Positions 3,101 through 36,268 of a stretch of DNA of 64,000 nucleotides are shown one piece after another. Numbering within the stretch: position 1 is the first letter of the stretch; the number at the start of each line of letters is the position of its first letter. The notes under the pieces are model-generated. The model saw only the letters and a list, made by a program, of their open reading frames with translations, was not told the origin of the DNA and did not search any database. Location: positions 496,001 through 560,000 of the forward strand of contig NW_026782274.1 in NCBI RefSeq assembly GCF_031769215.1. The letters run 5' to 3'. The translations under genes were made by a program, and so were the position numbers. The stretch is from Ylistrum balloti (lineage: Eukaryota).

Positions 3101-3623
3101 AGAAAGAACAGTTTATCATTGAATTTATAAAATAGACTAAGCGATCCGTGTACTTCTAAATTAAGTTTTGAGATTAACAACATAAATAATAACAAAGATT
3201 CTTCCTCACATTATAACGTGGTTTAATTTTCGTGGTAGGGACGACATTCACAAAGTGTCCTTCACCTTTAGCTGTATCAAAGAAAGTCAGAGGTTATTTC
3301 CACCTGTGCCAAATGTGTCCAGGTGTGCTGAAAAGGACATTACCTTACCTGATGGCCGCAATATACCAACAGGTGAGACATAACACGTGATCGACTGCTA
3401 CTATGTTTAGGTTTGTTATTTTCGCGACAGCTGACGTCATGCGAGGACGGCATCCACTTAACAATTAAAAAGAAATGTACACTGAATCAACATACTATAG
3501 AATTGTAGAAGGTTAACTTTAGTGGGTACTACAAATCCACAAATTAATGGACAGTTTAAAATTCACAATATGTTTAGTGCACGTGGAATTCTTTAGTACT
3601 AGTTAACTACGAAATAAAGAGAT

Positions 3624-3683
<60 letters not shown>

Positions 3684-5204
3684 TGCAAAATCTTAAGCTC
3701 GCGAAGGTTTGACTTTTCAGTAGAATGGTGGTCTTAAACAGTCAAGCTATGTTGAGGAAGATGAACCGACATATACACCATAGCCCTTAGCCGTCCAGTT
3801 CTAAGACCTCAGCTTTTACACGATATTCATTGACAATGAAGAATAATTTAAGCTGCTTAAATGGCATTTTGGGATGCTGCACGGACAGGAGAGCTCTGCA
3901 TATTCCTGAATGTTATATTCGAATAGTCAACGACAATATTGATAATTGTTTCTCCTTTCAGGTATGAGAATGGCAGTGTCATTGTTTGCTCTACACAGGA
4001 ACCCGGATGTTTGGGACAATCCTGAAGTACGTTGTTATATTAGTATTGATTTACCTGAAGTTCGTGTAGTACTGTAAGGGTATGAATGAACTTTTCTTTT
4101 TGATATTTCAAACATGAAAAACGCCCCTATGTAATCTGGATGTTATGTAAATATTTAGATGTATGAGTGTATGAAGTCAGTCTGTTTATGGTTCTTCACA
4201 AGACTTGTGTAGTTGATTTACATAGGTCACCTCACCAGGACAACGTGACCTGACAATGACATTAATGAACATATTTTAGATATATCTTATTTGATCAATG
4301 AAGCAGAAAACGCTTCTTCTTCGGAAACAAATTGTCGTCTTGCCCTTAAATAAGTTTCTTACGTTTGTTCATATTTTGTCTTAGTTTTACTCTTATGCTT
4401 CACACTTTAGGTCCTTAGCATCATTGACGAGACCTATAAGAACGAAACAGCTATATGATGTTTCATTTATTGTTTGGCCCTGCTGTATCTTAATATAAAT
4501 TTGTATCAGAAGGCGCTATTGACTTGTTTCTCTAGTGCAATCTTTCATAGGAGTTTAAATTTGAATTCAGATTCTGTGGACATGTCCGTATTTTTTAGTT
4601 GTTTTGATTTGTTCCCTAAATGACCTATGGTCACTTATGATTATTCGTACAGGAATTTGACCCATACAGATTTTCCGAAGAGAACAAGAAAACCAATGCC
4701 GGCTCCGGGAATTTCATCCCTTTTTCAATGGGCCCTAGGTAATATTGATACCCCCAATGTCCTTATTAATCTGAGCTAAGATTTCACTTATTTGTATGCA
4801 GATCAGACCTGAATAAATTATGTACATATCTGTATGAATTCTATGCTTATAAACTTGAGATCCGATTATATTGATACCGTACCGTTATCCTGGTAATACC
4901 GGCATATTACAAGGAAAATTAAAAACTGAATCGGCGCGGTTTACCAGTTGTCCTAAACTTAAATATTGAAAATATTAAAGATATCTGATACATCCAAGAA
5001 ATTTCGAGGAAACTTAAACTAATATTTTATTATTTCAGAAACTGTATAGGACAGGCTTTCGCAACGACCCAGTTGAAGGTTGTCGTTCCAACGGTATTAC
5101 GTAACTTCCGGTTGACCCTAGACCCCACTCGGCCAGCGGAACCGGAAGCCATGCTCATCCTTAGAAGTAAAAATGGACTTTATCTTAATATTAAAGCATT
5201 GTGA
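193..5204 (+). CDS. Cytochrome P450, CYP4 clan, 5'-partial (N-terminal exons lie upstream of the window). Exons 193-308, 524-634, 2334-2469, 2810-3000, 3239-3372, 3962-4026, 4653-4738, 5039-5204
   Basis: Eight GT-AG exons join in phase (1005 nt, 334 aa plus stop). Motifs: DFLDILL, EVDTFMFAGHDST (I-helix), ESQR (ExxR), DPYRF, FSMGPRNCIG (heme Cys). AATAAA at 5315 and 5333. Confidence 0.93.
608..1889 (+). repeat. 68/70-bp minisatellite derived from the CYP4 exon/intron junction (19 copies of GTCTGAAAACGG|GTAA)
   Basis: Core counted at 623, 691, 761, 829, 899, 967, 1037, 1105, 1175, 1245, 1315, 1385, 1455, 1525, 1595, 1665, 1735, 1803, 1873. The first copy is the real exon end and donor (634/635). 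Confidence 0.97.
3627..3681 (+). repeat. (GA)n microsatellite in a CYP4 intron
   Basis: Uninterrupted GA run. Confidence 0.97.
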
Positions 5205-6368: not shown

Positions 6369-8226
6369 CTACGAGAATTTTACAAGATTAGTGACGTAGC
6401 CATTAGCAATCACGTATCTGAAGACGTAGAAAAGAAGGACTAAGAAACATATTTTCTTGAAGAGAAGAATCCAGCCGTCGTAAAGTCCGTCCCTCTCTCC
6501 TTCCCCTGACTGTCGCGATTTCATAGGCAGATATGTATGTTCCTCCACCCTTTCGATCGCGTTCTTGGCACCTTCCCAAGAGCCGGGACCGTCCAGGCGC
6601 CATTGTACTGGGGTAGCTGGCCCAAAATACAGTTTATACCAAAGTTTCGGATCAGAGAAGAAGTGTTTCCAGAGGTCCGGTTTACATCCGATCATTGCAC
6701 TAAGTCGGTCGAGGTACTGAATGAAGTAAACCTGCAGACTATACCTGGGAGAGTCGACATATTTCGCTTTGATAAAATCTTTGCGTTTTTCTACATGGGC
6801 AAGACGTTTGGATGCGCTAGGTAACTTAGATTTTCCAGCAAACACCCTGGTGATACATCTTGCTTGCATTTCTAAAACTGGCGGAAGCGAGCCAAACGGT
6901 TGGACTAAGCCGACAACACCGAGGGTGCATGGGTTCAAATCAGTTGGAAACATCAGTTCGTACAGATAAGGATAATGTCCTTCAATTTTGATGATTCCAT
7001 CATCAAGAAAAGGAAAATCAAAGTTGAATCCCGTAGCAAGGATGACAACATCGATGTTCTTAAGAACTGAGCCGTCGTCGAATATAGCGCCATCTGTTGT
7101 GAACTCCTTCACATTGCACTTCACATTAATAGTGCCTAGTAGGATTCTGTTCGGAAGGTCGTCGCTAATAGTGACAACACCCGCGTCAAAGCAGTAGTTT
7201 GGCGACAGGCCGTAGTTGGAATGTTTATAGCGACGATTTATACGGTGGAAGAAAACGGGTCGCATGAGACTCCAAGGCAGGCTCTGGGAAAATCTGTTGA
7301 TGGCGAGATGATCAAACGGGACGCCGTACTCTGCAGCTCTCGAGATTACATATGTCCCTCGTCGGCTTGCTACATATACCTGCAAATAGAATTATTGAAA
7401 GAATTTCACTGATTAGACCGGAAAGTTTTCTGACTGGGCGTGAAATGACAGATACAATAGTTTAGCTTAGCCACATGCAGACCAAGTAAATGATTATATT
7501 TTCATCGTGCCCATTTTCAAATTTAAGGACTTCAAAACATATTGTGATAAACTTGTCCCCTTAATGGTCAAAACAAGATCATTGTACTCTTATGCTTACG
7601 TGTTCAGCATGACGACTCAACTCGCAGGCGACATCGGAGCCGGAATTACCAATGCCGATCACCAATATTCTCTTCCCTTCGAACCCATGGAAGTCCTTGT
7701 AATCGTGAGTGTGTATGACCTTGCCTTTGAATTTATCTAGACCAGAGAATGTCGGCACATTCGGAATACTGAGGTGTCCGTTACACACAATAACAAAATC
7801 AGTCTTCACATTCCGTGATTTGCCAGTGCTTAAATTCTTCACTGACGTCACCCAACTTCCGGTGTCGTCGAAATCGTCTGCCTTTTTAACGTCCTCAACA
7901 ATGTGGCTGAAAGTTATGTAGTTCATCAGGCCAAAATTTTCTGCATAGAGTTGGAGGTATTTCTTAAAGTGTTTGTGTCCCATGAAGTTTGGGAACTCTT
8001 TGGGGATCGGAAAGTCACTGTAACAGGTCATTTCTTTACTAGTGTTAATACTACATGAGTTGTAAAGGCTTGGGTCGCCATCTTTAGACCAGTTGTGGTA
8101 ATTCCAGAGTCCCCCAATGTCCGTATCCTTCTCAAAGCATATTGGTTCCATTCCCTCGTCCAGACATTGTTTGACCGCAGCCAGTCCGGCCACACCCGCC
8201 CCTATTACCAGCACTGTTTTTGCCAT
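6369..8226 (-). CDS. Flavin-containing monooxygenase (class B, FMO family), 545 aa. Coding exons 8226-7600 and 7379-6369
   Basis: GAGVAG (FAD site), FKGKVIHTHDYK (FMO fingerprint FxGxxxHxxxY), GIGNSG (NADPH site), LATGF, hydrophobic C-terminal anchor. One phase-0 GT-AG intron (7599-7380). A pyrimidine tract plus AG sits directly before the ATG, implying a 5'UTR intron. AATAAA on the minus strand at 6095-6090. Confidence 0.95.
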
Positions 8227-11569: not shown

Positions 11570-14500
11570 AATACCGCCATTCACGTGACCGTCGACATCT
11601 CTCAGACTTATTTCCAAGTTCAGTTCTGGAATTTTGATTCGGTAACGTATTACATGCTTTTATAAGTTGTTGAAAGCTAGAAATCCTTGTCGGCGATATT
11701 TTTGCAATATTTGGTTTTTTAAAGCTTTTTGACATAAACAGAATACATGTGAATGCCACATACATTAATTCATTCATCCATCCATCCACTCCATCATCAT
11801 CATCATCATCATCAGTTGACTAAATTCTTGACATCTATAAAAAGTGCAAGAATCAAAATCTTTTTGTATGTCTTTTACCATAGTCACCCCTCTATTAAAC
11901 CATGCTTGATTGAATATAACTGTTTTCCTTCCACCAATCCTCATTGAACCATAGAGAGGTTTCCCAAATATTACTTCTTATAATTTCTGTCCTAACCCTG
12001 TCATTTAATCTTATCCAGGCTGCAGAAACATCCTTCCAAAGTTTATTTTTACACAATTATGACATTTTTTAATATACTCCTTCTCCCTGGTAGATAACAA
12101 ATTCAGATCTGTGCAAGATTCAGGAATTACTTGCCATTTAGCTGTTTTCTGAAACAATCTTCTTACCCATCCCAGTTTCAAAGAATCAATAAATGCCCTT
12201 ACTATTTTCAGCCCTCCATCACAATAATTCTGAGTAACAATATCTCTCTTTACTTTATCAGTTTTACCATACCACAGAAAGTGAAAAAGAGTTGAATTCA
12301 GTTTAACAATGAAATTATCATCAGGGTTTGGCAATGCAATAAATAAATGATTAAATTGGGATATCATTAAAGACTTATTGAGATGAATTTTTCCCACAGG
12401 AGTAAGTGACCTCCTTCTCCATATTTTGACATTAGATTTTGATTTAATTAATTTCTTAATATAGTTTAATTTTGGAATTTTAAGTAAATTAACACTAAAT
12501 TGAACTGAAGTGTTAACTTAACTTTTCCCCACTGGAATTTCAACTATGGTAACAAAGTGTCCTCACTTTATTTTTTACTCCGGATCCAAACCACCTGTGT
12601 TTTGTCAATATTCAATTTCACGCCAGAGATTTTTGCGAAAGCATTTAATTCTACAATTGCTTCTCTCAATGACATTTCTGAACAATCTATATAAGGGAGG
12701 TGTCATCAGCATTTTGAAAGATTAGAATTAGAGTGTTACCGATATCTATCCCCATTTATTTCCTTATTATTTTTAAGTCTAATGGCCAAAATTTCTACAA
12801 ATAGAATACAAATATATGGAGCAAATTGATCGCCTTGACAACAGCCTCCTCTAATATTGATGAATGGAGACAAGGTTCCATCTTGATTTACAACTGCACT
12901 AACATTATTATGAAGCATCTTTATCCAATTTCTTCTGTCAGATGCGAAATTGAAATATTTAAAACCTTCATCAATAGATTTCCAAGAAACAGAATCAAAT
13001 GCTTTCTCAAAATCTATCAAAAACATACCCGGAATATTCATATTTTCAACATATAAAATTATATCATACACTAATCTCGTATTCTCACCAATGTAGTGAC
13101 CCGAAATAAAACCTGATTGATCCTCACCAATTAAAACATCTGAAATTTTCCTTATTCTGCTAGCTATTGTTCCTGATGCAATTTTGTATATGATATTCAA
13201 CAATATAATTGGGCGCCAACTTTTTAGGAACTGTCTTGGCTTATCTCCCTCAGAAACACAAATTCTGACCTCTTGTCTGTGTGTTATTGATAACTTGCCT
13301 GTCTCATAACTAAAATTGATTGACCTTATGATGACCCCTCCCCCCCCCCCCACACTTCCTCCCCATTCCACCTAATTGTCTCCAAAAGAATCTAACAGAA
13401 TTCCACACTGAAACTATCTGTACCAGGGCTTTTGTTTATTTTTCATGCTTTTCAATGTATTTGCTTCTTTGTCCATAGTTTTTCCCCGCTAATTTTGCTG
13501 CATCAGTGAGCCCCTATCATCAGTCTAATTTTGGAATAATTTTTGACGTAAAATTTTTACCTTCTAATCTGAGAAAGTATTTTGTAGTCTTTTCTCCTTC
13601 CTCTTGCTATCTTGCCCGAGATCTTACAGAGCTACCTTTAATCTTTTTTAATAACTGTTTCTTTCTGTGTGATGAGTATGCTATGGTTTCCAAAAATAGC
13701 TGATCATCAATGACATTTGCATTTGGAATATAATCTATATCTTGAAGACTATATATTAAAAGACAATATTGTATTTTCATCTCTAAAATGGTGTTACTTG
13801 AAAGCATTCCTCTTCATTCTGCATACAATAAGGATGGTTTGAATTTCCATAGTCCACTCCCCCATTTAAATTCATTAAATTTCAAGTGGAGAGTTGGAAA
13901 TGAGTGATCAGACCTTTGAACTGGCTCAATACTGGAGTTTGATGATAAATTTTGTGAAATAAGACAAAAATCTAATCTTGCTTGCTTTAATGGATTTTTT
14001 TTCTCCAACTATGTCTTCTCCTGTCAGGATGAACTCTCAATAAATATCTACCAATGAAAAACTTTCCATAATTTCTAATATTTTCTCTCTTGCCTTCAGG
14101 TTATTCGCATTTTTGTAGCTTCTGTCATAATCTAAATCTGGATCCAATACTAAGTTAGAATCTGTGATAAGTGTTATATTACATCCTTCCAGTATCTAGA
14201 GCTAAGACATTTCCTGAATTATCCCCTCTTTTCCCTTTTTAATCTTAATTTCGAAATTATCATTTATCAAAATAACTACCTCTCAAGAATTAGATCTAAA
14301 AGAGCTGAAACAACCATCGTAACCCCACTGATTTCTGATATGTTTGGTTTCCTTCCATGGAATGCGTGTCTTGTAAATCATAGCTACAGATTTTTTAAAA
14401 CTTGAAGTAAGAGAAAACATTAACGATACTCCCAAGACCCTGCCGATTGGCGGAGAGAACAGTTATACCTTCAATTACTAGCTACTTAAAATTACGGTGC

Positions 14501-16839: not shown

Positions 16840-18039
16840 TTAAACCTTGCGTTTAATGACGTAATACTGAAATATCCCGGAGTTGTCAGTGGCGACACCT
16901 ACAGATTGCACTAGACTAAACTTCTGCAATCGCCTGAAGTTAGATGATGACAGAAGAACTGGAGTGTGACCAAACGTAACCATGAACCCGTTCTCTCGAA
17001 CAGTTGGTAGTAATGCATCCAAAAGGACTTCAGCCTCGGTGGAAGTGACGACTTCAGAATTCAAGAAACGATTGAAGCACACATCAGCAGTTCCGGTTGG
17101 TATCTTTGGATCCATTGCATTTCCACAGTGCACTTCATCGACTCGTTCTCTAGCAAAATCAGCCATTTGTTGACTAAGATCTTGACCGAAAGTGTAACTT
17201 TCTGGAAATGCTTTCTGTAACGAAGAGAGAAACACCCCGGTAGAACAGGCGGGGTCGTACAACCTTCCCATTGTCATGGCAACACCACCCAAGAACTGAA
17301 CAGTATACTGTCTTATCCGTTCCTCTCCATGGCTGAGCATTGCATCATAGGTATCGTCAACCTTCCATCCCTCCGCTGGGGAACACAGCTCCTTTCTGGA
17401 GGACTCCCTAAGGAGTGGGAAGGGATAGATAATTTCGACTTTGGATGAGTCCCTAGTCATGATATCCTCAAACAGTTTAAGTTTCTCGGAATTACCTAAG
17501 GGATAATAACTGACCTGTACCTCCTTCTCAGTAATGCGCTCATCGTAAAACAAGCCCAGAATCATATCAGCTGTCACCAAGCTGCAGTGGAGTTCCGGTA
17601 TCTTCCCGGCAATCCAATAATCTGACAAAATCTTTCTTCCGACCAATCTCCACGAACCCGGAACACCAGGTTTTCCCACATCAAGGAAAAATACACTTTG
17701 TGGTAGGTGATGAAATGGCTCGTTAATACGCCTCAAGTCTCTTTCCACGATATTTTCCCATGGTATAACTCTCTCTGGAGATGTACCAGGTGGCATTTTC
17801 TTTTCTTCATATCTTCTAACCTCGCTTATGATGAGTGAGAGACATTTGTTGTCGAGGTGACTCTCAGTGGTCTTACTCAAAGCATCACATAGAAGCTTCT
17901 TCCCGGCATCCCAATTTCCTGATGACAGCAGCTTTCTCGCCTTGTGAAAGTCATTCCGGATTTCTGGGTCATGGATACTTTTGAATATACCATCGTAGCT
18001 TGTAATAGCGTCGGTACGGAGATCCAAGTCATCCGCCAT
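16840..18039 (-). CDS. Intronless class I SAM-dependent transferase, 399 aa from the Kozak-context ATG at 18039; likely 3-amino-3-carboxypropyl (ACP) transferase of the Nat/isonocardicin synthase type
   Basis: Single ORF; CAAC-ATG-G context at 18039; SAM motif I YDPACSTG, motif II GQDLS, RFLNSEVV, FGHTP; AATAAA on the minus strand at 16777-16772. The Nat resemblance is from recall of family motifs, not a search. Confidence 0.85.
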   Translation of the reverse strand: MADDLDLRTDAITSYDGIFKSIHDPEIRNDFHKARKLLSSGNWDAGKKLLCDALSKTTESHLDNKCLSLIISEVRRYEEKKMPPGTSPERVIPWENIVERDLRRINEPFHHLPQSVFFLDVGKPGVPGSWRLVGRKILSDYWIAGKIPELHCSLVTADMILGLFYDERITEKEVQVSYYPLGNSEKLKLFEDIMTRDSSKVEIIYPFPLLRESSRKELCSPAEGWKVDDTYDAMLSHGEERIRQYTVQFLGGVAMTMGRLYDPACSTGVFLSSLQKAFPESYTFGQDLSQQMADFARERVDEVHCGNAMDPKIPTGTADVCFNRFLNSEVVTSTEAEVLLDALLPTVRENGFMVTFGHTPVLLSSSNFRRLQKFSLVQSVGVATDNSGIFQYYVIKRKV

Positions 18040-18630
18040 GTTGAATACAGTTTGTAAGAAAGGGGCACATACACGTGTGTGGTACACGGAATAGGTTAAC
18101 GCCAGCTGTTATCGCACATGTAAGATTAGGGAGTCTTTATCTCACTTGTAACTACATAATCCGTCCAGAGTGACCAGTCAGACTGACCTTCGATAAACAT
18201 TTTGTTACAGGTGAGTCCATCAGCATTTGTGATTGTTTTCGAAAACAACTAAATATAGTAATATAGACAGTCATGTTTTAAAAACTAGGTTAAATCTAAA
18301 TTAAATTGAAAAGATTTTAATTAAAAAATACTGTTAATACAATTTCGATCTACTGAGAAAAAATACAGAGAACGTGTGGTATACCAGATAACACTACATG
18401 TATACAAACGTGAACACGTATGCAAAGATATCCATATTATTCAATAGGCGATACTTTGAAATACTTATTTTCAGTATTAACGTTGAGCTGTTTAGTGAGT
18501 GTAACAGCGGCTCGATCTGTCCAGTCCAACACATATCAATCAGAAAATATTCGTTCTAAAGTTGTTCTGTGCCAAGGTAATTAAGACTCTTTCATTTGCT
18601 TGTTTACTTCTGGAGATTCGGACCAACAAG
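18040..18630. promoter_or_regulatory. Putative bidirectional promoter between the SAM transferase and the divergent P450
   Basis: The two start codons (18039 minus, 18631 plus) face away from each other with 591 bp between them. Confidence 0.6.
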
Positions 18631-21600
18631 ATGGCGTCAACTGGTGTCAGTATCATCATCCACGGTGTGTTGTACTTTCTGAAATATGTCAATTATATGG
18701 TGAGTATTACTAACTTTTCGTTTAAGATGTCTAAACATTCTGAAATGATTCAATTAGATATGATTTCTCAGCATCTTATGCTAATTTTTATGTTTAAAAA
18801 AACCTGAGAAATACATGCACACATGCGCAAGTCCCACATTACACTTTTGGGTATCACATGGTAAGAAATTGCTTGAGGGATTTGAAATGACGACTCTAAT
18901 GCTGGGCACAAAAAACAATATTTGTTTGATATTCAAGAGTTTATTTTCTACATCATGACTTTCGTGCATGATATAGACAACTGACAGACAAATGCACAAC
19001 ACAGGGTTTCCAGATTTGCAAATTGATGAAAATGATGGGAAGGTTTAAATGTCTTTATAACGATCTCGTCAGGAAATATTCGGGAAGCTGGACATGTATT
19101 GATGCTTGTTAATCTGCCTCTTGGTTCCGTATTTATTTACATTGTTCTGTTTTTGGGAACGTGACATTTTATATCAGTAAGACATCTAGAAGTAAGACAT
19201 CGAGATAGCAGTACATGGTTACCGCAATGTAAATTTCAATTCAGGTACAGGAAAAATCATTATCTTCTTAAACAAAGGTTATATCAAATTGTAAAATACT
19301 GGAGTGAAACATAAAAACCATAATCACAGAGTGTAATTAACCATACTTTCATTTGTTGCAGTGCTGCAGTACAACAGTACCAGAGACTGGCGCCATTGTC
19401 AATCTGCTTTTAAACCAACTGTTCGGAGACGACAAACTGAAAAAGCTAGAATACCTTTGTCAATTTTATCATAAATTTGGTCTGTTCAAATATGAAAAGA
19501 AAATATATCTGTTTGATGAGAAACTAGCACAAACTGCCATTCATAAACTAGACAAAGGAGCAGACAACTACTTAGAAGATTCTCCACTCAAAGATACGTT
19601 TTTAGGATCTTCTCAAAAAAGTCCAGAAACAAGACGTGCTATAGCTTCTATTTTTCGTAAAACTTCTATAGATGAAAGAGGTCATGTAATGATCCGTGAC
19701 CTTGACCTTTTGTGTCGAAATATGCAAGAGGTCAGTAGCAAGTCAAGACCAGTGAATATTACCCAGTTCAGCTTAAGACTCGCTCTGGACGTAGTCGGTC
19801 ACGTGCTATTGCATCTTGACCTTGGAGGACTAAAAGGTCATCAAGATCGTCTGCTTGATTCAATGATGACCATTCTGCACAGGTAGGTGAACAAGGAGCT
19901 CAAACGTCGACGTTGTTTACTGGAGATATCTAACCGTATATAAGTAGTTTTAAGATACCCTCCTTTCTTAACGGCTAGTTCATTAACTATTTTTAAAGGA
20001 AACAATATCCTACATTTTGGTTTTACTCTTGAAGCAGTGATAAAAGTCTTTTTAAATGTGGTTTTGTTGTAATGTTAATATGATGGAGAAAGGACGGAAA
20101 TTTTATTTTTTGACTTTGTTTATTATGTGACTTATTTTGTATATGTTTTCTGGAGGTGTTACGCTCTAGCCGAAATAACTACTAACAGCAGTGAGTTCAT
20201 ACGGGCAACCGAGAACCTGGACCGTCTGACGTCACAGATCTTAGAGAACGCACTCAACAAGGATGATCAGACGGAGGACAAGAGGCTGGTTTTCCAGCTT
20301 TACGAGGCTTGTGGCTTCGAACAGGTACATATTATATCGAAATATCTATTAACATTGTGCTTATAAAAATACTAGCAGTCTTATCTACAAATTAATGATT
20401 TGAAGTTATTGATTTTAAATATGTATGTAATAACATGAATTCTAAAGAATCATATATTGAATATATTTTTTTATCATTTACGATTCAAATTAATTAAGTT
20501 GTTTTAAAAAAAAGAGTTATAAGGTAAATTGACTTTCTGAGTTTTGATAACTCGCGGTTTTTATAAAAACGTTTAAATTCCCGGTGTTCCGTGTAATGTC
20601 GGGATATACTGTTGTTTCAGGCCAAAGACAACATGAAACTGTTTCTGATGGCTGGCACAGAAACCACAGCATCTACCTTGCCGGTTATATTTTACCTTCT
20701 TACCAAGTATCCTCACATCCAGGTAATCTTTGTCTCTTACCTGTAATGTTTGTTTATCGAGGTATCATCACATCCAGATAGCCATCCTGTCTTACCTGTT
20801 ATATTTGTTTATCAAAGTATCCGCATATCCAGGTAATTTTTGTCTCTTATATTTTACCTGTCTATCGAGGTATCCTCACATCCAGATAACCATCCTCTCT
20901 TAGTTGGTATATCTTACCTGTCTATCGAGGTATCCCCACATCCAGATAGCTACCCTGTCTCACCCGGTATATTTTACCTGTTTATCGAGGTATCCTCACA
21001 TCCAGATAACTATCTTGTCTTACCTGTTATATTTTACCTGTTTATCGAGGTATCCCCACATCCAGATAGCTACCCTGTCTCACCCGGTATATTTTACCTG
21101 TCTATCGAGGTATCCTCACATCCAGATAATCATCCTGTCTTACCTGTTCTATTTTACCTGTCTATCGATATATCCCGTCATTCCATGATTAACGATACAA
21201 AGTGTTCACTTGTCCTTCATTTCATTACTCCGTCATAATTTCGTTTATGTTCATCACTTCGGATACAGATATTGAACTGTAATACGGCAATGTACGAGGA
21301 TGTAACGATTAGTATACACACAACTATTGTTACATAATCATGCAAGTCTGCTTCTGATTTTAAAATGATAATTATTATTTACTAACTTTAATAAGCTTGA
21401 TTTAAACCTGGAGAACCTTGCAATGGGAATTTTTAGTTTACCCAAAGTGTTAACAATGCATTTTTTGCATGAATTATTACTATAACATTAAGAGTTTGAA
21501 TTCGTGGATTTCGACTTGGTTAATCATTTTTTTGGCACTCGAAAACAGCTTTATCTTTTGGAAAAAGACTAATAGGATAAAACTGCAAAATTATAAGGCA

Positions 21601-23234
21601 CAACGACCCACTTTTTAATCATGAAAATGTTCATATGAAAGCATAAAGTCTTTTTAAAAGATTAGTACACGATCAAATAAATCATTTTCAAAATTTTCAC
21701 TTTTTGGTTGCAGTGCAGTTTTAAGATCGTAAAATTAAATGAAAATCTAACATTTCCCCTTAATTTTCTATCATTTAGTTGTCATTCTACTACCTTTTAA
21801 TAAAAGAGGAAAACATATTGCCTCGAAAATAACAAAGAATGCCTATTATGGAGTAAAAAAATAATAATGATTGATGAAGGGTGGATTATCTCCCGTTACA
21901 TATATATATTCTGCATTTTTGCTTTTAAAATTGAATTTGATCAATTTGGCCTCTAGACCTTTATACATCCTTTACAACCTTAACAAAGTCGATAACACTT
22001 ACAAAATATAAACATCTCCTTCGTTCCCTGCAGAAACTTTTGTGTTTTTCCGACACATCTAGTTCTTCATAGTAGGTCACGTGATATACTATATGTCTGT
22101 TTTTATAATATCACACTTCTAGTTTAGAACATTCTTCAGATGATGTAAATGATAATGTTCGCTTTATTTGTTTGTTTGGAACGTTGGAAACAAACTCACA
22201 AAATACGTTTATGTACAATTAGATGGAACTCCAGGCTGAAGCTGATGAAAATATAGACAGTTTACGGAAAGACCCGAACTTCCCTTTGCCGAAGATAGAT
22301 AGCGTTATGAAGGAGGTACTCCGATTGTATCCTATTGCGCCTTTCATCAGTAGACAGAACCACGGCCCCGTGACTATAGGCAAGATTGATCTGCAGGAAC
22401 ATGTAAGTTAAACGTTACAGTCGTGTTATTTGAACACCTAGTTATGTTACCATAGTGAAATACATCTACATGAATTATGGTTACGTTACCATAGTAACTA
22501 CTTATACGATTTTCTTAACAATTAGGTTGTTATGGCAATCACTCAGGTCATATTTAAACATCTTATCATAGTGTTGCATTCATGTTGTCGTTATAGTTTA
22601 GATATAGTCAAGTGACAATAACAATGTATAGTTACCATTACAACTCTACGTTTAATGTCTGTTGTCAATTTTCCCATTCATAACGGTCACAACGTCTTTC
22701 TAAAAAATAATGCATATGTTATTTTGTATGTTTGGATAATTTAGCAAATGTTCGAAGCACGGCTAATTTATCATGGATATCAGGACCTAGGTAATCCTGT
22801 TCAATATTTTATTCAATGCCAAAAATGACTAACATCAGTTCCTTGGAATGTAAACAGTATACTAATATTGGCTTTTTTGTCGATTGCAGAGCGACCTGCT
22901 GGTATTTACCTGGGGGATTCATAGATCACCATACGCGTGGGACCATCCGCATGACTTCGTACCTTTTCGCTTTTACGAAAGCACTTCCAAAAATCATAGT
23001 TCAAATTTATACATTCCATTCGGTGCCGGATCGCGAGTTTGTATTGGTCAGCACCTAGCGTGGCTCGAGATCCGATTGGCTATTGCGATTTTGCTCAATA
23101 AATTTGATTTCAGGCCAACAGAGGAGACTCCTGACCTTCGGTTTGTGGTAGACTGGACACATGCCGTAGTTCATCCGGACAAAGACATGTTGTTCATGGC
23201 TGTTCCACGTACCAAACCATTTAATATCACTTGA
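18631..23234 (+). CDS. Divergent cytochrome P450, 461 aa. Exons 18631-18699, 19362-19882, 20156-20324, 20621-20722, 22223-22402, 22890-23234
   Basis: Exons join in phase (1386 nt). Hydrophobic N-terminus, AGTETT (I-helix), EVLR (ExxR), PFRF, FGAGSRVCIG (heme Cys). AATAAA at 23532 and 23619. The exon-3 acceptor is an uncommon GAG. Family not recognisable by eye. Confidence 0.9.
20675..21180 (+). repeat. 55-60-bp minisatellite derived from the 3' end of P450 exon 4 and its donor
   Basis: TATCCTCACATCCAG-like core at 20708 (real exon end), 20763, 20818, 20871, 20931, 20991, 21051, 21111. ORFs across the array repeat exon-4 peptide pieces (YPHIQ, LPVIFYL). Confidence 0.93.
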
Positions 23235-31258: not shown

Positions 31259-34200
31259 ATGCCTGTGATTGATATCCCTGACATTACGTCATGCACGAGC
31301 TATATCGCCGCGCTAGATTCCGATCGGTCAATTCCTAGCGCTGTCATTGGAGAAGGTAATCTGCTTCTGTCTTGCCTAGAATATTTGACAGATGCCAGCT
31401 TCACTATTTCAGCCGTCTTCACAGATACACCTGTAGTCAAAACCTTCTGCGAAGAGAAGAAAATACTTCAGTGGAAAAGAGGAACAGATATCGAACATGC
31501 CCTGAGAGATATTCCAATTGACTATCTTTTTAGTATATCTAATCCTAGAGTTTTGACAGATTCTGTATTACAAATACCCAGAAAACTGTCAATCAACTAC
31601 CATGATTCACCACTTCCCAGATATGCTGGAATCCACGCAACCAGCTGGGCCATCATCAATGGCGAATCGAACCATGGTATTTCCTGGCACGTAATCGAGA
31701 CGGGTATCGACACTGGAGATATTCTCCAGACAAGAGCAGTTAAAATTGATCCTGACGATTCTGCATTCACATTAAATATGAAATGCCAAGAAGCAGCCAA
31801 ATCAGCATTCCAAATTCTGATCAAGGATGTTAAACAGGACTGCATTAACCGAACGACACAACCGGTTTCTGGAAGGTCGTATTACGGGTTGCATGCCATA
31901 CCGCCAAACATTGGAGTCCTTAATTTCCAGACGTCCTGTACAAATATCTGCAATCTTGGAAGGGGACTGGAGTTCGGAACTCATGACAATGCACTTGGAA
32001 GCCCCAAAGTTATGACATCAACAGGCGATTTTGTGCTCGTCACAAATGTCGAAGAATCTAATTGCAGTTTTGACGAACATGTTAAACATGGAACTATCAC
32101 AGAAATAGTTGACGATACTTTGGTTGTCAAAACGCAGGGAAACTCGGTTTTGCTGTCAATTACAAAATTGGATGGATCCCATCTGTCGCCATCAGAATAC
32201 AGCGATCTTGGGATATCGGTTGGTGAAAAGCTTTCAAGTAATTTTGCGGTAGACACGGAAAATCTGACACAAATAAGAAAGAAGGAGACATTTTGGAGAA
32301 GAAAGTTAAAGATTTATGATCCAACGACATTTTTCCGACAAAGAATGAATGTGGTTGCAGGTATCATAGATGTTTCTACAGCAATCAACGTCAAGTCGAT
32401 CGTTATTCCGCTACCCGTCCCAAACATGAATGGACACAGCTTCCATACACATACTTGTGAACTTCTTATGTCAGCATTTGTTGCATTCATCGGACGAATG
32501 ACTTGTAACTCGAATGTCTCTCTCGGTATCCTGGCAAACAAGTCGACTGTACCCGAAATGGCAAGAGGACTTTACTCTGACATCTGTCCAGGAGTATTCA
32601 CCGTCGATCTACAGCAGAAAACACATGTTGTCTTGCATGACCTTTACGAAATGATAAAAACTTACAGAGAGGCACAATCGTTCTTAGTAGATGCGTTTTA
32701 CAGGTACCCTGAACTCCGTGGACAAAAGAGAACACCTCACCATAACATAGCGATAGGCCAAATTCCTAGTCATGCGTCAGCTACCGGTGTTGCACAGCAC
32801 GTTCTTCATGACTGCAACATATTGCTACTGTTTAATGACGACGGAGATGAGATGCATTTGATGTACAAGGAAAAGATCGGTCAAGATTTCCAATATATCA
32901 GTGATGTTCTTCAGCACTTCCCAACATTTCTCACTACTAGTGACCTGAATCAGCCTTTGCACGAGACTCATCTAGTCTCAGACGAGGAACTTAAACAACT
33001 TTATCTACAGCCTCTTCCTTTCAAGCCGTCAACCAAAAGCGTTTATGACGTTTTCGAAGAACAGTGTAGGTCTAGTCCAAATAACATAGCTCTGCGGTCA
33101 TCAGCTACATCATACACCTACAACCAGTGTAACGAGTTAGCAATGAAGGTTTCATGCCTTCTTGATGCCACATATGAAGATGAAAGAATCATTGGACTTC
33201 ATTTTCCAAATTCAATGGAATATGTAGTCTCCGTCATCGGCGTTTTGAAAACCAATCGTGCATTTCTGCCACTTCCCATAGATTACCCTGAAGAAAGGAT
33301 GACTTTCACTCTGCGAGATGCAAAAGTCCATAGTATGTTGACTACCGCCTCAGTTTATGAAAACCTGAAATCTAAGGGATTTTCATTGACACAGGTAGGA
33401 GCAGATGCTGTGCAGATAGATCGTAATGAAGTAATACTTGTTCGATTTGCGAAAAATGAGAACAAGGTGAAAGGAAATGAAAATGACTTTGTCCATATCA
33501 TTGATGGAAAGGCAAAAAAAGGCGGCGTCCAGACTGGCAGAATTCTGAATGGACATGAGGAATGTGGAAGGACAAAAAATGGAGAATGCGATGCTGATGA
33601 CTTTAAGATTCTCCAGAACAATGGCTTTACTTCAAAAATGACGAGTCAGATATTAGATGAGGAACTTTGTTACGTGATGTATACGTCAGGTTCCACTGGT
33701 AGACCTAAGGGAGTTCAAGTAAGCCACTCCGGTGTCGTCAATCTCGCTAAAGCGCAGATAGAGCTCTGGAGTCTTCACGATGGTGATGTGATTGCCCAAT
33801 TCGCCTCCATTGGATTCGACGCGACGGTATCTGAAATATTCACAGCCCTATTTTCTGGTGCAACTCTCGTTACTCTTTCCGACGAAGAACGTTTAGGCCA
33901 GGAATTCATCCGTACGTTAAACATGCTGGATGTGAATACAATCACACTGCCCCCATCCGCCCTCAACATATACAGTCCAAACGACCTACCCAAACTAGAA
34001 AAGGTTGTTACCGCTGGAGAAGCCTGTTCGCTAGGAACTGCCCTCAAATGGACGGTCGACAACAAGACAATAAGATTCTTCAACGCATACGGCCCGACTG
34101 AAACAACTGTTTGTGCAACATGTTATGAATTCAAATCGTCCGATGTCCACGTCGACAACACTCAAGACTTACCAATTGGCATGGCCATACCTGGCATGAG

Positions 34201-36268
34201 TGTATATCTTTTTGACAACTTCATGAAACCAGTTCCTCCTGATGTTGTTGGCGAGATCTACGTAGGAGGTATTGGTGTATCCAAGGGATACATCGGTCAC
34301 GCAGCGGAGCACAACTTGGAACGATTTGTCCAGAATCCAATGACAGATCAGCTTTGCCTGTTATACAAAACAGGCGATCACGCGTTTCAATCAAATGATG
34401 GCAATATCACTTACATCGGGAGGTTGGATGACATGATAAAGATCAGGGGCCAACGAGTTGACCTTAGTGAAATTGAGCAAGTTCTGATTCAACATACAAA
34501 GGTGGAACTTGCTGTCGTTGTAGCACATAGATGTACAGACTCGAATGAGATTAGTATAGCGGCGTATGTGGCACCTTCTTTCGTGTACTTGTCGGAATTA
34601 CGGGAGTACTTGACGAAAGCTCTTCCAAAATACATGATACCGACGTTCATTAAGAAAATTGAGGTAGCTGACTTCCCAATGACACTGAATGGCAAAATAG
34701 ACAGAAAACGTCTTGAAAAAGACGAATCTGTACATGAACAATCAAGATTTGGTGGAGGCAGTCATCTAAACGAAACGCAACTTGCTATAGCTCAACTTTG
34801 GTGTACAGTTCTCAAACTTAACGAATCGATAATACATGAATTTCACCGCCAGACATCTTTCAGTGAACTCGGCGGCAACTCTTTGCAGTTGGTGCTCCTA
34901 CAGCGTACGTTAGAAGACAAGCTCCATATCCAGTTGTCGTTTACAGACCTAGGTATGGCAGATACGATAGAGGAATTCTGCGACGTCATCAGAAGAAAGA
35001 AAGATATGCTCCGAAGATCTAATCAAAACAATTCAAATGATCTGCGTGATCTTCGTCAGGTAATAGTGCAGGATTCTATTCTAGATCCATCGATCATACC
35101 TCAACATGCTAGGCGTGGCTCTATTAAGTTCAGTCACTTCTCGGCGTTTGTACAGAAATGTTCCATGAAATACCCAAGGAACGCTCTAATGTCAGGCGTG
35201 ACCGGATTCCTGGGGGCGTATCTCCTGTCTGAACTTCTTGAACAAACAAACGCTCATGTGTGTTGTATGGTTCGAGAATCTACAGAGGCAAGGGGATTCG
35301 GTAGAATAGTTGAAAATCTCAGAAAGTACAACTTATGGAAAGTAGAATATGGGAGTAGAATCGCGGTAGTGATATCCGACCTATCACAGGAAAATCTCGG
35401 TATAGCGCCAGACATTTACACGGCACTTTGCAACGTCATCGATGTTGTATTCATGAATGCAGCCAAGATGAATTTCAACACTGATTATGATGACCACAAG
35501 GTTGCAAATGTCGACAGTACCAAGGAATTCATCAAATTCGCTGTAACAGGCACTCAGAAATATATATTTTCAACGTCATCGTTGAGCGTTTTCCTCTTCC
35601 CCAACAGCCCTTCCAGCACACCACCAACCAATCGAATGTGTTATGAGACCGAGTTCTGGGATGACCCTTGCACCTTAGAAGGGGGCTATGGAAAAAGCAA
35701 ATGGGCAAGTGAAAAATTGGTCGTGCAAGCACTCGAGTACCTCCCTGGCGGAGCTATATTCCGACCAGCAAGAATATCTGGATGCTCTTTTGACGGCGCT
35801 GGTCCAAGGAACGACCTTTTCGCGTCTACCTTAATCGGTATGACGCAATTAGGGTCGTTTCCCGACATGGACTTTCCCTACGATCTCACACCAGTGGACT
35901 ATGTAGCCAAGGCAATGGTGGAAATCTCTCTGCAGATTTGCAACGACAGTAACCATCATGAACATGTTTATCATCTGTTCAATTCTCAGACAATTCCTTT
36001 TAAGGACATTTTCAAAGGAATGGGTCTGAAGTCTCTTCCTCTTGAACAATGGCGCCAAGAACTCCGAAATGCATCTGACGACAGCAAGGTCCTTATCCCG
36101 TTTACACCGTTTTTCCATTCCGAGTTTTGGGACAAGGCGCCTCACTGGCCAGTATTTGACACTTCAAACACAGACAGACTTACCAGCGACCGCACAAAGG
36201 AACTATTGAAACCTTCAAAAGACCTCTTGTGCTTGTACAAAACATATTTTGGTCTAAATACCAAATAG
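31259..36268 (+). CDS. Monomodular NRPS, 1669 aa: formyltransferase (N and C subdomains), relic condensation lobe, adenylation (Tyr-type code), PCP, terminal NAD(P)H thioester reductase (FmtATR-like)
   Basis: F domain: NYHDSPLPRYAG and GIDTGD (Asn113, His115, Asp151). A domain: YVMYTSGSTGRPKG, FDAT, NAYGPTE, GEIYVGG..GY, YKTGD, GRLDDMIKIRGQRVDLSEIE, LPKYMIP, NGKID. T domain: LGGNSL (Ser1208). R domain: SGVTGFLG, STSS, YGKSK. Uninterrupted 5010-nt ORF; spliceosomal acceptor TTTATTACAG ends at 31245. Confidence 0.97.
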   Translation: MPVIDIPDITSCTSYIAALDSDRSIPSAVIGEGNLLLSCLEYLTDASFTISAVFTDTPVVKTFCEEKKILQWKRGTDIEHALRDIPIDYLFSISNPRVLTDSVLQIPRKLSINYHDSPLPRYAGIHATSWAIINGESNHGISWHVIETGIDTGDILQTRAVKIDPDDSAFTLNMKCQEAAKSAFQILIKDVKQDCINRTTQPVSGRSYYGLHAIPPNIGVLNFQTSCTNICNLGRGLEFGTHDNALGSPKVMTSTGDFVLVTNVEESNCSFDEHVKHGTITEIVDDTLVVKTQGNSVLLSITKLDGSHLSPSEYSDLGISVGEKLSSNFAVDTENLTQIRKKETFWRRKLKIYDPTTFFRQRMNVVAGIIDVSTAINVKSIVIPLPVPNMNGHSFHTHTCELLMSAFVAFIGRMTCNSNVSLGILANKSTVPEMARGLYSDICPGVFTVDLQQKTHVVLHDLYEMIKTYREAQSFLVDAFYRYPELRGQKRTPHHNIAIGQIPSHASATGVAQHVLHDCNILLLFNDDGDEMHLMYKEKIGQDFQYISDVLQHFPTFLTTSDLNQPLHETHLVSDEELKQLYLQPLPFKPSTKSVYDVFEEQCRSSPNNIALRSSATSYTYNQCNELAMKVSCLLDATYEDERIIGLHFPNSMEYVVSVIGVLKTNRAFLPLPIDYPEERMTFTLRDAKVHSMLTTASVYENLKSKGFSLTQVGADAVQIDRNEVILVRFAKNENKVKGNENDFVHIIDGKAKKGGVQTGRILNGHEECGRTKNGECDADDFKILQNNGFTSKMTSQILDEELCYVMYTSGSTGRPKGVQVSHSGVVNLAKAQIELWSLHDGDVIAQFASIGFDATVSEIFTALFSGATLVTLSDEERLGQEFIRTLNMLDVNTITLPPSALNIYSPNDLPKLEKVVTAGEACSLGTALKWTVDNKTIRFFNAYGPTETTVCATCYEFKSSDVHVDNTQDLPIGMAIPGMSVYLFDNFMKPVPPDVVGEIYVGGIGVSKGYIGHAAEHNLERFVQNPMTDQLCLLYKTGDHAFQSNDGNITYIGRLDDMIKIRGQRVDLSEIEQVLIQHTKVELAVVVAHRCTDSNEISIAAYVAPSFVYLSELREYLTKALPKYMIPTFIKKIEVADFPMTLNGKIDRKRLEKDESVHEQSRFGGGSHLNETQLAIAQLWCTVLKLNESIIHEFHRQTSFSELGGNSLQLVLLQRTLEDKLHIQLSFTDLGMADTIEEFCDVIRRKKDMLRRSNQNNSNDLRDLRQVIVQDSILDPSIIPQHARRGSIKFSHFSAFVQKCSMKYPRNALMSGVTGFLGAYLLSELLEQTNAHVCCMVRESTEARGFGRIVENLRKYNLWKVEYGSRIAVVISDLSQENLGIAPDIYTALCNVIDVVFMNAAKMNFNTDYDDHKVANVDSTKEFIKFAVTGTQKYIFSTSSLSVFLFPNSPSSTPPTNRMCYETEFWDDPCTLEGGYGKSKWASEKLVVQALEYLPGGAIFRPARISGCSFDGAGPRNDLFASTLIGMTQLGSFPDMDFPYDLTPVDYVAKAMVEISLQICNDSNHHEHVYHLFNSQTIPFKDIFKGMGLKSLPLEQWRQELRNASDDSKVLIPFTPFFHSEFWDKAPHWPVFDTSNTDRLTSDRTKELLKPSKDLLCLYKTYFGLNTK

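What the first reader, a model, noticed from the sequence alone, without database searches (positions are those of the whole stretch)
18040..23234. Highly divergent P450 head-to-head with the ACP transferase: candidate benzylic beta-hydroxylase
The start codons are separated by only 591 bp, which suggests shared regulation. The P450 keeps the O2-activating Thr (AGTETT), ExxR and the heme Cys, so it should be an active monooxygenase. It lacks a recognisable WxxxR C-helix motif, is short (461 aa) and has an exon layout unlike the CYP4 in the window. Bursatellin and oxazinins carry a benzylic oxygen that needs such an enzyme. It could instead be the oxime or nitrile enzyme.
Basis: partly seen in the sequence, partly recalled or inferred. 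Interest (0 to 1): 0.7.

Follow-up and report, generated by a model that had tools for sequence, protein, structure and literature searches.

The report
Scallop copy of published bur-ox P450
This is an intact, strongly conserved cytochrome P450 gene back-to-back with the aminocarboxypropyl transferase gene of the mollusc bursatellin/oxazinin gene cluster; a 2025 paper already proposed it as the pathway's hydroxylase, so the finding is real but not new, and its chemistry is still untested.

Summary
A six-exon, 461-aa P450 gene (18631-23234, +) starts 591 bp from the ATG of a single-exon ACT gene on the other strand. AGTETT, ExxR, PFRF and the heme cysteine are present, and the tryptophan of WxxxR is absent.

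The gene is the scallop ortholog of the P450 in the published bur-ox cluster (Venugopalan & Schmidt, JACS 2025). That paper already predicts that the P450 installs the hydroxyl group and the FMOs make the nitrile.

- **Intact and constrained.** All 125 family-conserved residues are kept. dN/dS against the Mizuhopecten ortholog is 0.08.
- **Conserved gene pair.** The ACT/P450 head-to-head pair is present at 8 of 9 orthologous loci examined. One of these is a hemichordate, which the paper does not mention.
- **Shared introns.** Hemichordate and mollusc genes share intron positions. None is shared with a Lottia CYP3-clan gene.
- **Isolated lineage.** Best matches outside the family are bacterial by a small margin. 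AU tests reject neither a bacterial nor a CYP3-like sister group.
- **N-terminal helix.** A hydrophobic helix sits in its own first exon. This does not sit easily with the paper's 'globular' description.

The function (benzylic hydroxylase or oxime/nitrile enzyme) cannot be settled by computation.

The parts
16840..18039 (-). ACT (aminocarboxypropyl transferase, isonocardicin-synthase-like) gene. Single exon, 399 aa, ATG at 18039.
   Evidence: ORF. Pfam Methyltransf_25/11. 77% identical over its full length to the gene called next to the Mizuhopecten P450. The family was characterised as ACT in PMC11869996.
18040..18630 (.). 591-bp region between the two divergent start codons; candidate shared promoter.
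   Evidence: The rest of this spacer cannot be aligned between scallops (dS about 1.1).
18107..18117 (+). TGTTATCGCAC, an 11-mer conserved in the ACT/P450 spacer of three scallops, 41-67 nt upstream of the ACT ATG. It holds a GATA core on the other strand.
   Evidence: Exact match in the window, Mizuhopecten (L002:9900) and Argopecten (L010:9806). It is the only match with up to 1 mismatch in 64 kb, 19 kb and 27.5 kb respectively. It is absent from the spacers of the other species.
18631..18699 (+). P450 exon 1: 23 aa, MASTGVSIIIHGVLYFLKYVNYM, the N-terminal hydrophobic helix.
   Evidence: (P0158 residues 1-23 align here). The donor is GTGAGT.
19362..19882 (+). P450 exon 2: 173 codons plus 2 nt. 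Holds the VPETG hinge, helices A-E and the C-helix SPETRR.
   Evidence: 87% identical to P0158. Pfam p450 reaches 13.3 bits.
20156..20324 (+). P450 exon 3: 1 nt plus 56 codons, the short F/G-helix region.
   Evidence: The phase-2 intron before it is shared with Mizuhopecten, Dreissena, Mercenaria and Littorina.
20621..20722 (+). P450 exon 4: 34 codons, the I-helix with AGTETT.
   Evidence: Pfam p450 30.9 bits.
20677..21176 (+). Minisatellite (60-nt unit, 120/180-nt super-units) whose first unit is the last ~45 nt of exon 4 plus the splice donor region.
   Evidence: Tandem Repeats Finder and blastn self-matches. The later units read CAGATAAC where the exon junction reads CAG|GTAATC.
22223..22402 (+). 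P450 exon 5: 60 codons, the J/K helices with ExxR (KEVLR).
   Evidence: Pfam p450 20.7 bits.
22890..23234 (+). P450 exon 6: 114 codons plus the stop. Holds FTWGIHR, PFRF, the heme loop FGAGSRVCIG and the family motif VVDWTHAVVHPDKD.
   Evidence: Pfam p450 81.9 bits.
6369..8226 (-). Context: FMO gene (at least two exons), the other oxidase of the cluster.
   Evidence: ORFs. 84% identical to the FMO upstream of ACT in Argopecten.
31259..36268 (+). Context: intron-free FmtATR NRPS gene, 8 kb downstream of the P450.
   Evidence: 82% identical to Pecten maximus, 80% to Mizuhopecten; PMC11869996.

Best explanation
The gene is the scallop ortholog of the cytochrome P450 of the mollusc bur-ox (bursatellin/oxazinin) gene cluster. 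It is an intact, O2-activating heme-thiolate monooxygenase with a weak N-terminal membrane helix. It is transcribed divergently from the ACT gene across a short spacer, and the two are probably regulated together. The most likely reaction is hydroxylation of the benzylic (beta) carbon of the tyrosine-derived scaffold. That would supply the benzylic oxygen of bursatellin and of the morpholinone ring of oxazinin-1 and -2. The clustered FMOs would then N-oxygenate the aminocarboxypropyl group on the way to the nitrile. Shown here: gene integrity, orthology, purifying selection, conserved pairing with ACT, and complete catalytic motifs. Inferred, not shown: co-regulation, the substrate, the site of oxidation, the order of steps and the redox partner. 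Identity as the bur-ox P450 ortholog: about 0.97. Beta-hydroxylase role: about 0.5.
For: Orthology: 85% identity (385/451) to the Mizuhopecten protein P0158, with all 55 invariant and 70 near-invariant family residues kept. The family clade has 100/100 support and its internal order follows mollusc relationships. Synteny: FMO(-), ACT(-), P450(+), FmtATR(+) in the window, matching the published cluster. Selection: dN/dS 0.08 with dS about 1.1 against Mizuhopecten. Pairing: ACT lies head-to-head with the P450 in the window (591 bp), Mizuhopecten (142 bp), Argopecten (245 bp), Crassostrea virginica (235 bp), Mercenaria (~0.9 kb), Littorina (~1.5 kb), Dreissena (~3.1 kb) and the hemichordate Glandiceps (776 bp). 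A scallop-conserved 11-mer lies in the spacer. Catalysis: the acid-alcohol pair E268/T269 (P0158 numbering), ExxR, PFRF and FGAGSRVCIG are conserved across the family. Fold: the AlphaFold2 model of P0158 has mean pLDDT 87 and matches CYP3A4/5, P450 BM3, CYP97 and CYP184A1 at TM about 0.75. Chemistry, from established knowledge: class B FMOs oxygenate N and S nucleophiles and do not hydroxylate sp3 C-H bonds, so the P450 is the only clustered enzyme suited to benzylic hydroxylation. The published authors make the same prediction.
Against: No experiment or computation here identifies the substrate. P450s also turn amino acids into oximes and oximes into nitriles (plant CYP79 and CYP71, from general knowledge), so the nitrile route is equally open to this enzyme. 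The pairing is with ACT, not with FmtATR. In the hemichordate the pair occurs with no FmtATR within 10 kb, and no hemichordate appeared among the listed FmtATR hits. That would fit a role on the ACT product. Haliotis keeps the P450 with no ACT within 10 kb upstream. The window's own N-terminal helix is only marginally hydrophobic (Kyte-Doolittle 19-mer mean 1.34), so membrane anchoring and CPR dependence are uncertain.
Confidence: 0.5

Rival explanations
1. The P450 works on the group that ACT installs. It N-hydroxylates and decarboxylates the O-(3-amino-3-carboxypropyl) ether to an aldoxime, or dehydrates that oxime to the 2-cyanoethyl ether. This would make it functionally like plant CYP79/CYP71 or insect CYP405/CYP332. 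The benzylic oxygen would then come from another enzyme.
For: The tight divergent pairing is with ACT specifically, at 8 of 9 orthologous loci, while the distance and orientation to FmtATR and the FMO vary. In the hemichordate the ACT/P450 pair stands with no FmtATR within 10 kb, and no hemichordate FmtATR was listed in the protein search. Many invariant polar residues lie in the stretches expected to contact substrate (SPLKDTFLGS, TILHRCYAL, VVDWxHAVVHPDKD), which would suit a zwitterionic substrate. The O2-activating motifs suit N-hydroxylation as well as C-hydroxylation.
Against: The cluster already holds FMOs, the enzyme class best suited to N-oxygenation, and no other enzyme able to hydroxylate a benzylic C-H bond. 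There is no sequence affinity to the CYP79 or CYP71 families: CYP76-type plant P450s sit far away in the tree. The apparent absence of FmtATR in the hemichordate is weak evidence, because the ACT gene itself was left unannotated there.
Confidence: 0.25
2. The P450 hydroxylates the beta carbon of (N-formyl)tyrosine while it is still bound as a thioester to the T domain of FmtATR, before reductive release. Bacterial NovI, OxyD and P450sky act this way on carrier-bound amino acids.
For: The P450 sits in an NRPS cluster and has bacterial best hits. The published work could not fix the order of steps.
Against: None of the carrier-dependent beta-hydroxylases (OxyD, P450sky, NikQ) is among the best 60 solved-structure hits. 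The top hits are CYP184A1, CYP97, CYP3A and BM3. The conserved partner is ACT rather than the NRPS.
Confidence: 0.1
3. The P450 has a role in or outside the pathway that is neither of the above. Examples are forming the indole-bearing morpholinone of oxazinins, or a detoxification role that only happens to be linked to ACT.
For: Function is untested. A scallop paralog (P0166) has left the cluster and lies beside an aerolysin-like gene, so the family can take other contexts.
Against: Pairing with ACT is kept across bivalves, a gastropod and a hemichordate, and selection is strongly purifying. The distribution matches that of the cluster genes.
Confidence: 0.15

Closest known systems
P450 of the bur-ox cluster of Mytilus (Venugopalan & Schmidt, J Am Chem Soc 2025, PMC11869996)
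   Same: Same gene family: 57-60% identity to the Mytilus galloprovincialis protein P0002. Same neighbours (ACT, FMO, FmtATR). Same predicted role, installing the hydroxyl group.
   Different: This is a scallop copy. The paper calls the protein globular and bacteria-like. Here every full-length member carries a hydrophobic N-terminal helix encoded by its own first exon, and the tree does not place the family inside the bacterial clade. The paper does not mention the hemichordate pair.
CYP184A1 of Streptomyces avermitilis (PDB 7wzl/7wzm) and related ~450-aa bacterial E-class P450s
   Same: Best solved-structure hit to the family profile (154 bits, aligned over profile positions 102-426). Similar length. 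The best non-family database hits are bacterial or from metagenomes (156 bits).
   Different: Only 24-31% identity. The bacterial proteins have no N-terminal hydrophobic helix. The margin over CYP97 (150 bits) and CYP3A (132 bits) is small. The AU test does not reject a bacterial sister group, and no analysis here supports one (p 0.14).
Animal CYP3 clan (CYP3A4/3A5) and CYP4 clan
   Same: Top Foldseek hits at TM about 0.75. NCBI's automatic names are '3A28-like' and '4Z1-like'. The layout is microsomal in style: N-terminal helix followed by a proline hinge.
   Different: Not inside either clade in the tree. None of the 12 introns of a Lottia CYP3-clan gene coincides with the family's introns. 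The tryptophan of WxxxR is lost in the whole family. The protein is about 40 residues shorter.
Carrier-protein-dependent beta-hydroxylases NovI, OxyD and P450sky (functional analogy only, from general knowledge)
   Same: They hydroxylate the beta carbon of tyrosine or other amino acids in NRPS pathways.
   Different: They are not among the best 60 solved-structure hits by sequence. They belong to a different P450 class.
Plant CYP79/CYP71 and insect CYP405/CYP332 oxime- and nitrile-forming P450s (functional analogy only, from general knowledge)
   Same: They convert an alpha-amino acid to an aldoxime and then a nitrile. The aminocarboxypropyl ether must undergo the same net change.
   Different: No specific sequence relationship was seen.

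Membership tests
Cytochrome P450 superfamily (Pfam PF00067) | Heme-thiolate loop FxxGxRxCxG | tested here: met
   FGAGSRVCIG in exon 6. Exon 6 scores 81.9 bits against a cut-off of 22.8.
Cytochrome P450 superfamily (Pfam PF00067) | K-helix ExxR and the PERF-type motif | tested here: met
   KEVLR in exon 5 and PFRF in exon 6. Both are invariant in 23 family members.
Cytochrome P450 superfamily (Pfam PF00067) | I-helix (A/G)Gx(D/E)T(T/S) oxygen-activation motif | tested here: met
   AGTETT in exon 4, 30.9 bits. A265, G266, E268, T270 and A271 are invariant.
bur-ox cluster P450 (PMC11869996) | Orthology to the mussel cluster P450 | tested here: met
   tblastn of P0002 (Mytilus) and P0158 (Mizuhopecten) covers all six exons. 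All 125 conserved positions are kept. The clade has 100/100 support.
bur-ox cluster P450 (PMC11869996) | Clustered with ACT, FMO and FmtATR | tested here: met
   FMO 6369-8226(-), ACT 16840-18039(-), P450 18631-23234(+), FmtATR 31259-36268(+).
bur-ox cluster P450 (PMC11869996) | Catalyses an oxidation of a bursatellin/oxazinin intermediate | not testable with these tools
   No biochemical data exist for any member.
Animal CYP3 clan | Falls inside the clan in a phylogeny | tested here: inconclusive
   Outside the CYP3-like clade (100/99) in the free tree. A forced union is not rejected (lnL difference 9.6, p-AU 0.30).
Animal CYP3 clan | Shared intron positions with clan members | tested here: not met
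   None of the 12 Lottia CYP3-like introns matches family introns at P0158 residues 23, 197, 254, 288 or 348. Only one comparator gene was used.
Animal CYP4 clan | Falls inside the clan in a phylogeny | tested here: inconclusive
   Outside the CYP4-like group (85/68), on an unresolved backbone. No AU test was run for this union.
Bacterial-type soluble P450 acquired by transfer | Nested among bacterial sequences | tested here: inconclusive
   The bacterial clade (93/73) excludes the family in the free tree. A forced union is not rejected (lnL difference 3.2, p-AU 0.14). Best profile hits are bacterial by 20 bits.
Bacterial-type soluble P450 acquired by transfer | No N-terminal membrane segment | tested here: not met
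   Family members carry a hydrophobic N-terminal helix (Kyte-Doolittle 15-mer maxima about 1.4-2.4, apart from one divergent gene model at 0.72). It is encoded by a separate exon and predicted helical by AlphaFold2. Bacterial relatives have none. It is weaker than in typical CYP4 anchors, so true membrane insertion is not shown.
Carrier-protein-dependent amino acid beta-hydroxylase P450s (OxyD, NovI, P450sky) | Sequence relationship to those families | tested here: not met
   Absent from the best 60 solved-structure hits for both the single sequence and the family profile.

The most novel reading that the evidence does not exclude
ACT and this P450 form an old, self-contained two-gene module that is not tied to the mollusc NRPS. 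The pair, in the same divergent orientation and with shared intron positions, also exists in the hemichordate Glandiceps talaboti. There it lies beside a WelO5-like Fe/2OG enzyme gene, and no FmtATR was seen within 10 kb. On this reading the P450 acts on the ACT product, for example turning the aminocarboxypropyl ether into the nitrile. The module would predate the protostome-deuterostome split, or have moved between animal phyla. Cyanoethyl or homoserine aryl ethers should then occur in acorn worms.
Probability: 0.2. Interest if true: 0.6.

Novelty: already known. Interest (0 to 1): 0.3.

Why it matters
Animal biosynthetic gene clusters are rare. In the bur-ox cluster only the reductase and ACT steps have been shown experimentally. 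The enzymes that install the benzylic oxygen and the nitrile are still unassigned, and this P450 is the leading candidate for one of them. The scallop gene gives another intact ortholog for expression trials, which have a low success rate according to the authors. The comparative results sharpen what to test. First, express the protein with and without its first-exon helix, and with a eukaryotic CPR as well as bacterial redox partners. Second, give as much weight to ACT products as to tyrosinols when choosing substrates. Third, look in hemichordates for related metabolites.

Tried and rejected
1. Relic exon. tblastn alignments ran from exon 5 upstream into 22139-22222, as if a decayed copy of the I-helix exon lay there. 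The protein-level score is only 28 against 14.7 +/- 2.9 for shuffles (3 of 2000 reach it), there is no DNA similarity, and an in-frame TAG is present. I treat it as unproven.

2. Clan assignment. The careful tree leaves the backbone unresolved. AU tests reject neither a bacterial nor a CYP3-like sister group.

3. Intron sharing with the CYP3 clan. None was found, but only one comparator gene was used.

4. Joined spliced protein. Exons were searched one at a time by reference. Full-length analyses used the database orthologs P0158 (85% identical) and P0002 as stand-ins. The selection and residue checks were also done exon by exon.

5. Failed look-ups. Encoding contigs for P0151 (Mytilus californianus) and P0187 (a fish CYP3A) were not on record.

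6. FmtATR in the hemichordate. This could not be properly tested. The flanks are only 10 kb and the protein search is limited by query length and by annotation.

7. Promoter scan. The sigma-70 promoter and terminator scan was not used because this is a eukaryotic locus.

8. My own argument from memory. I first thought oxazinins lack a benzylic oxygen, which would have favoured the nitrile role. I dropped it. The paper describes them as built on 'tyrosinol or deformylated bursatellin', and the reported masses of oxazinin-1 and -2 fit the oxygenated core.


Full report
**What is in the sequence**

The window is eukaryotic (about 35% G+C, retroelement ORFs, split genes). Between 18631 and 23234 on the plus strand lie six open segments that together encode a cytochrome P450. 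I read the exon borders from the sequence:
- exon 1, 18631-18699
- exon 2, 19362-19882
- exon 3, 20156-20324
- exon 4, 20621-20722
- exon 5, 22223-22402
- exon 6, 22890-23234, including the stop

All five introns begin GT and end AG, and the model has 461 codons. tblastn of database orthologs covers every exon with the same borders.

On the minus strand, a single ORF encodes a 399-aa SAM-methyltransferase-fold protein. Its ATG at 18039 is the start also used by the Mizuhopecten and Argopecten orthologs.

- AGTETT in exon 4
- KEVLR (ExxR) in exon 5
- PFRF and FGAGSRVCIG in exon 6
- a C-helix reading SPETRRAIASIF, which keeps the arginine but has no tryptophan

Pfam's p450 model passes its threshold on exons 4 and 6. 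It barely registers on the 177-aa N-terminal exon (13.3 bits).

Exons were searched one at a time by reference. Full-length work used the database orthologs P0158 (Mizuhopecten, 85% identical) and P0002 (Mytilus).

**What it is**

That paper describes a mollusc gene cluster, bur-ox, made of four kinds of gene:
- the NRPS FmtATR
- an aminocarboxypropyl transferase (ACT)
- a cytochrome P450
- two FMOs

It shows experimentally the reductase step and the ACT step. Of the P450 it says three things. The P450 lies next to ACT. It is 'predicted to be globular' and 'bacteria-like'. [quoted passage not shown] No biochemical test of the P450 is reported there, and none turned up in later papers of the library.

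The window carries the same set in one block: FMO (6369-8226, -), ACT (16840-18039, -), P450 (+) and an intron-free FmtATR (31259-36268, +). The FmtATR protein is 82% identical to that of Pecten maximus and 80% to Mizuhopecten. The P450 exons are 85% identical to Mizuhopecten and about 83% to Argopecten. The window therefore comes from another scallop species.

**Is it functional?**

A 23-member alignment of the family has 55 invariant and 70 nearly invariant positions. The window's exons keep every one of them. Against the Mizuhopecten gene, summed exon by exon, dS is about 1.1 and dN/dS is 0.08. That indicates strong purifying selection.

An AlphaFold2 model of P0158 built on the family alignment is confident (mean pLDDT 87, pTM 0.89) and shows an ordinary P450 fold. 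Its closest solved structures are CYP3A4/3A5, P450 BM3, CYP97 and CYP184A1, at TM about 0.75 and about 20% identity.

**How divergent, and from where?**

A search with the Mytilus ortholog gave three tiers of hits:
- bivalves and gastropods, down to E = 1e-100
- one hemichordate protein (Glandiceps talaboti, 36% identity, 1e-73)
- everything else at 1e-23 or worse, aligned mostly over the C-terminal third

With a family profile, members score 353 bits or more and the best outsider scores 156 bits. The outsiders at the top are about 450-aa bacterial or metagenomic P450s with 24-31% identity. Animal CYP3-like proteins follow at 133-136 bits. Against solved structures the profile's order is CYP184A1 of Streptomyces (154 bits), CYP97A3 (150), CYP3A (132) and BM3 (121).

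A careful maximum-likelihood tree used 60 proteins under LG+C20+F+G4. It gives the following:
- The family is a 100/100 clade on a stem of about one change per site.
- The hemichordate is sister to all molluscs.
- Gastropods and bivalves separate roughly as the species do.
- The clade attaches to an unresolved backbone. It lies outside the bacterial clade (93/73), the CYP3-like clade (100/99) and the CYP4-like group (85/68).

AU tests reject neither a union with the bacterial sequences (p 0.14) nor one with the CYP3-like animals (p 0.30).

The paper's 'bacteria-like' stays a possibility that these data neither establish nor exclude.

Two features look eukaryotic rather than bacterial.

First, family members begin with a hydrophobic helix followed by an (I/V)PEPG-type hinge. 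Kyte-Doolittle 15-mer maxima are about 1.4-2.4, except for one divergent gene model at 0.72. In every locus mapped the helix is encoded by its own first exon. The bacterial relatives have no such segment. The helix is weaker than the anchors of typical CYP4 proteins: the window's 19-mer mean is 1.34, against a usual threshold of about 1.6. I therefore call it a marginal anchor or membrane-associating helix. It does not sit easily with 'globular'.

Second, the gene is intron-rich, whereas ACT and FmtATR are intron-free.

**Intron history**

I mapped the exact exon structures of eight family genes on their contigs and placed the introns on the alignment. Positions below use P0158 numbering.

| Intron | Phase | Molluscs | Hemichordate |
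|---|---|---|---|
| after the N-terminal helix (residue ~23) | 0 | all mapped | present, in a poorly aligned stretch |
| residue 254 | 0 | all mapped | within three columns, next to an alignment gap |
| residue 348 | 0 | all mapped | exact match |
| residue 288 | 0 | all mapped | absent |
| residue 197 | 2 | scallops, Dreissena, Mercenaria, Littorina | absent |

None of the 12 introns of a Lottia CYP3-clan gene coincides with any of these.

The hemichordate and mollusc genes therefore descend from one ancestor that already had introns. They are not two separate acquisitions from bacteria. If the gene came from bacteria, the transfer and the first intron gains happened before these lineages received it.

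**The link with ACT**

This is the strongest comparative result. ACT lies immediately upstream of the P450 on the opposite strand in eight of the nine orthologous loci examined.

| Species (locus) | Distance between start codons |
|---|---|
| This window | 591 bp |
| Mizuhopecten (L002) | 142 bp |
| Argopecten (L010) | 245 bp |
| Crassostrea virginica (L003) | 235 bp |
| Mercenaria (L007) | ~0.9 kb |
| Littorina (L008) | ~1.5 kb |
| Dreissena (L006) | ~3.1 kb |
| Glandiceps talaboti, hemichordate (L001) | 776 bp |

In Littorina, FmtATR lies 6.6 kb beyond the P450. In Glandiceps the ACT homolog is an intact 405-aa ORF, 41% identical to the scallop protein, and it is not annotated in the record. 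Haliotis has no ACT within 10 kb upstream of its P450. A scallop-specific paralog, P0166, has left the cluster.

The paper's main text does not mention hemichordates.

Within scallops the spacer has diverged beyond alignment. The exception is one exact 11-mer, TGTTATCGCAC (window 18107-18117), 41-67 nt upstream of the ACT ATG in all three species and unique in each locus. It is a candidate regulatory element, but it could equally lie in the ACT 5'UTR.

Expression itself was not testable.

**What it most likely does**

Shown: an intact, constrained, O2-activating P450 that is genetically tied to ACT inside the bur-ox cluster.

Inferred: its reaction. The pathway still needs two kinds of oxidation:
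- a benzylic oxygen, present in bursatellin; the paper describes oxazinins as built on 'tyrosinol or deformylated bursatellin', and the reported masses of oxazinin-1 and -2 fit the oxygenated core
- conversion of the aminocarboxypropyl ether to a 2-cyanoethyl ether

From established enzymology, class B FMOs oxygenate nitrogen and sulfur nucleophiles and do not hydroxylate sp3 C-H bonds. A P450 does so readily. The simplest assignment is therefore P450 for benzylic hydroxylase and FMOs for N-oxygenation toward the oxime and nitrile.

The main rival, at about 0.25, is that the P450 acts on the ACT product to form the oxime or nitrile, as CYP79/CYP71 do in plants. Two points favour it. The conserved partner is ACT rather than the NRPS. 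And the pair stands in a hemichordate with no FmtATR in view. That last point is weak, because the flanks are short and the annotation there is incomplete.

A carrier-bound beta-hydroxylation of the NovI/OxyD kind is possible. No sequence affinity supports it.

**Verdict**

- proof of integrity and constraint for the scallop gene
- conservation of the ACT/P450 divergent pair, including in a hemichordate
- intron positions shared between the hemichordate and mollusc genes
- a phylogenetic result that leaves the 'bacterial origin' claim open
- evidence for an N-terminal helix that bears on how the enzyme should be expressed

Noticed in passing
L001:8007-9224 (-) and L001:10001-13329 (+), Glandiceps talaboti OZ203274.1: A hemichordate carries the same divergent ACT/P450 pair. 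The ACT homolog is an intact 405-aa single-exon ORF, 41% identical to the scallop ACT, and is not annotated in the record. The P450 is 36% identical and shares intron positions with the mollusc genes. The bur-ox paper does not mention hemichordates.
   Followed up: partly
L001:1-2889 (+): The gene upstream of the hemichordate ACT/P450 pair hits Pfam WelO5 (Fe/2OG halogenase/hydroxylase-like). No FmtATR or FMO lies within the 10-kb flanks. This may be a different small cluster built around the same pair.
   Followed up: no
window 18107-18117: TGTTATCGCAC is conserved exactly in the ACT/P450 spacer of three scallop species whose spacers otherwise do not align. It is unique in each locus and holds a GATA core on the opposite strand.
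   Followed up: partly
window 20677-21176: A 60-nt-unit minisatellite in intron 4 is built from copies of the last ~45 nt of exon 4 plus the splice donor region. Only the first unit keeps the GT donor at the exon junction. The Mizuhopecten intron 4 is only 359 bp, against 1500 bp here.
   Followed up: partly
window 22139-22222: The frame continuous with exon 5 reads DDVNDNVRFICLFGTLETNSQNTFMYN*. This is faintly like the I-helix exon (score 28 against 14.7 +/- 2.9 for shuffles). In the hemichordate the I-helix and K-helix parts share one exon. It may be a relic, or it may be chance.
   Followed up: partly
L005:10001-16352, Mizuhopecten NEDP02005373.1: A scallop-specific paralog of the bur-ox P450 (P0166, 510 aa, with an N-terminal extension) lies away from ACT, beside a gene with a weak ETX_MTX2 (aerolysin-like) hit.
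   Followed up: no
window ~2770-5190 (+): A CYP4-like P450 gene sits upstream of the FMO. Its heme-binding part is split over more exons than in the bur-ox P450. Whether it belongs to the cluster is unknown.
   Followed up: no
window 12011-13371 (-) and 45984-47494 (-): Reverse-transcriptase-like ORFs (retroelement remnants) flank the cluster genes.
   Followed up: no
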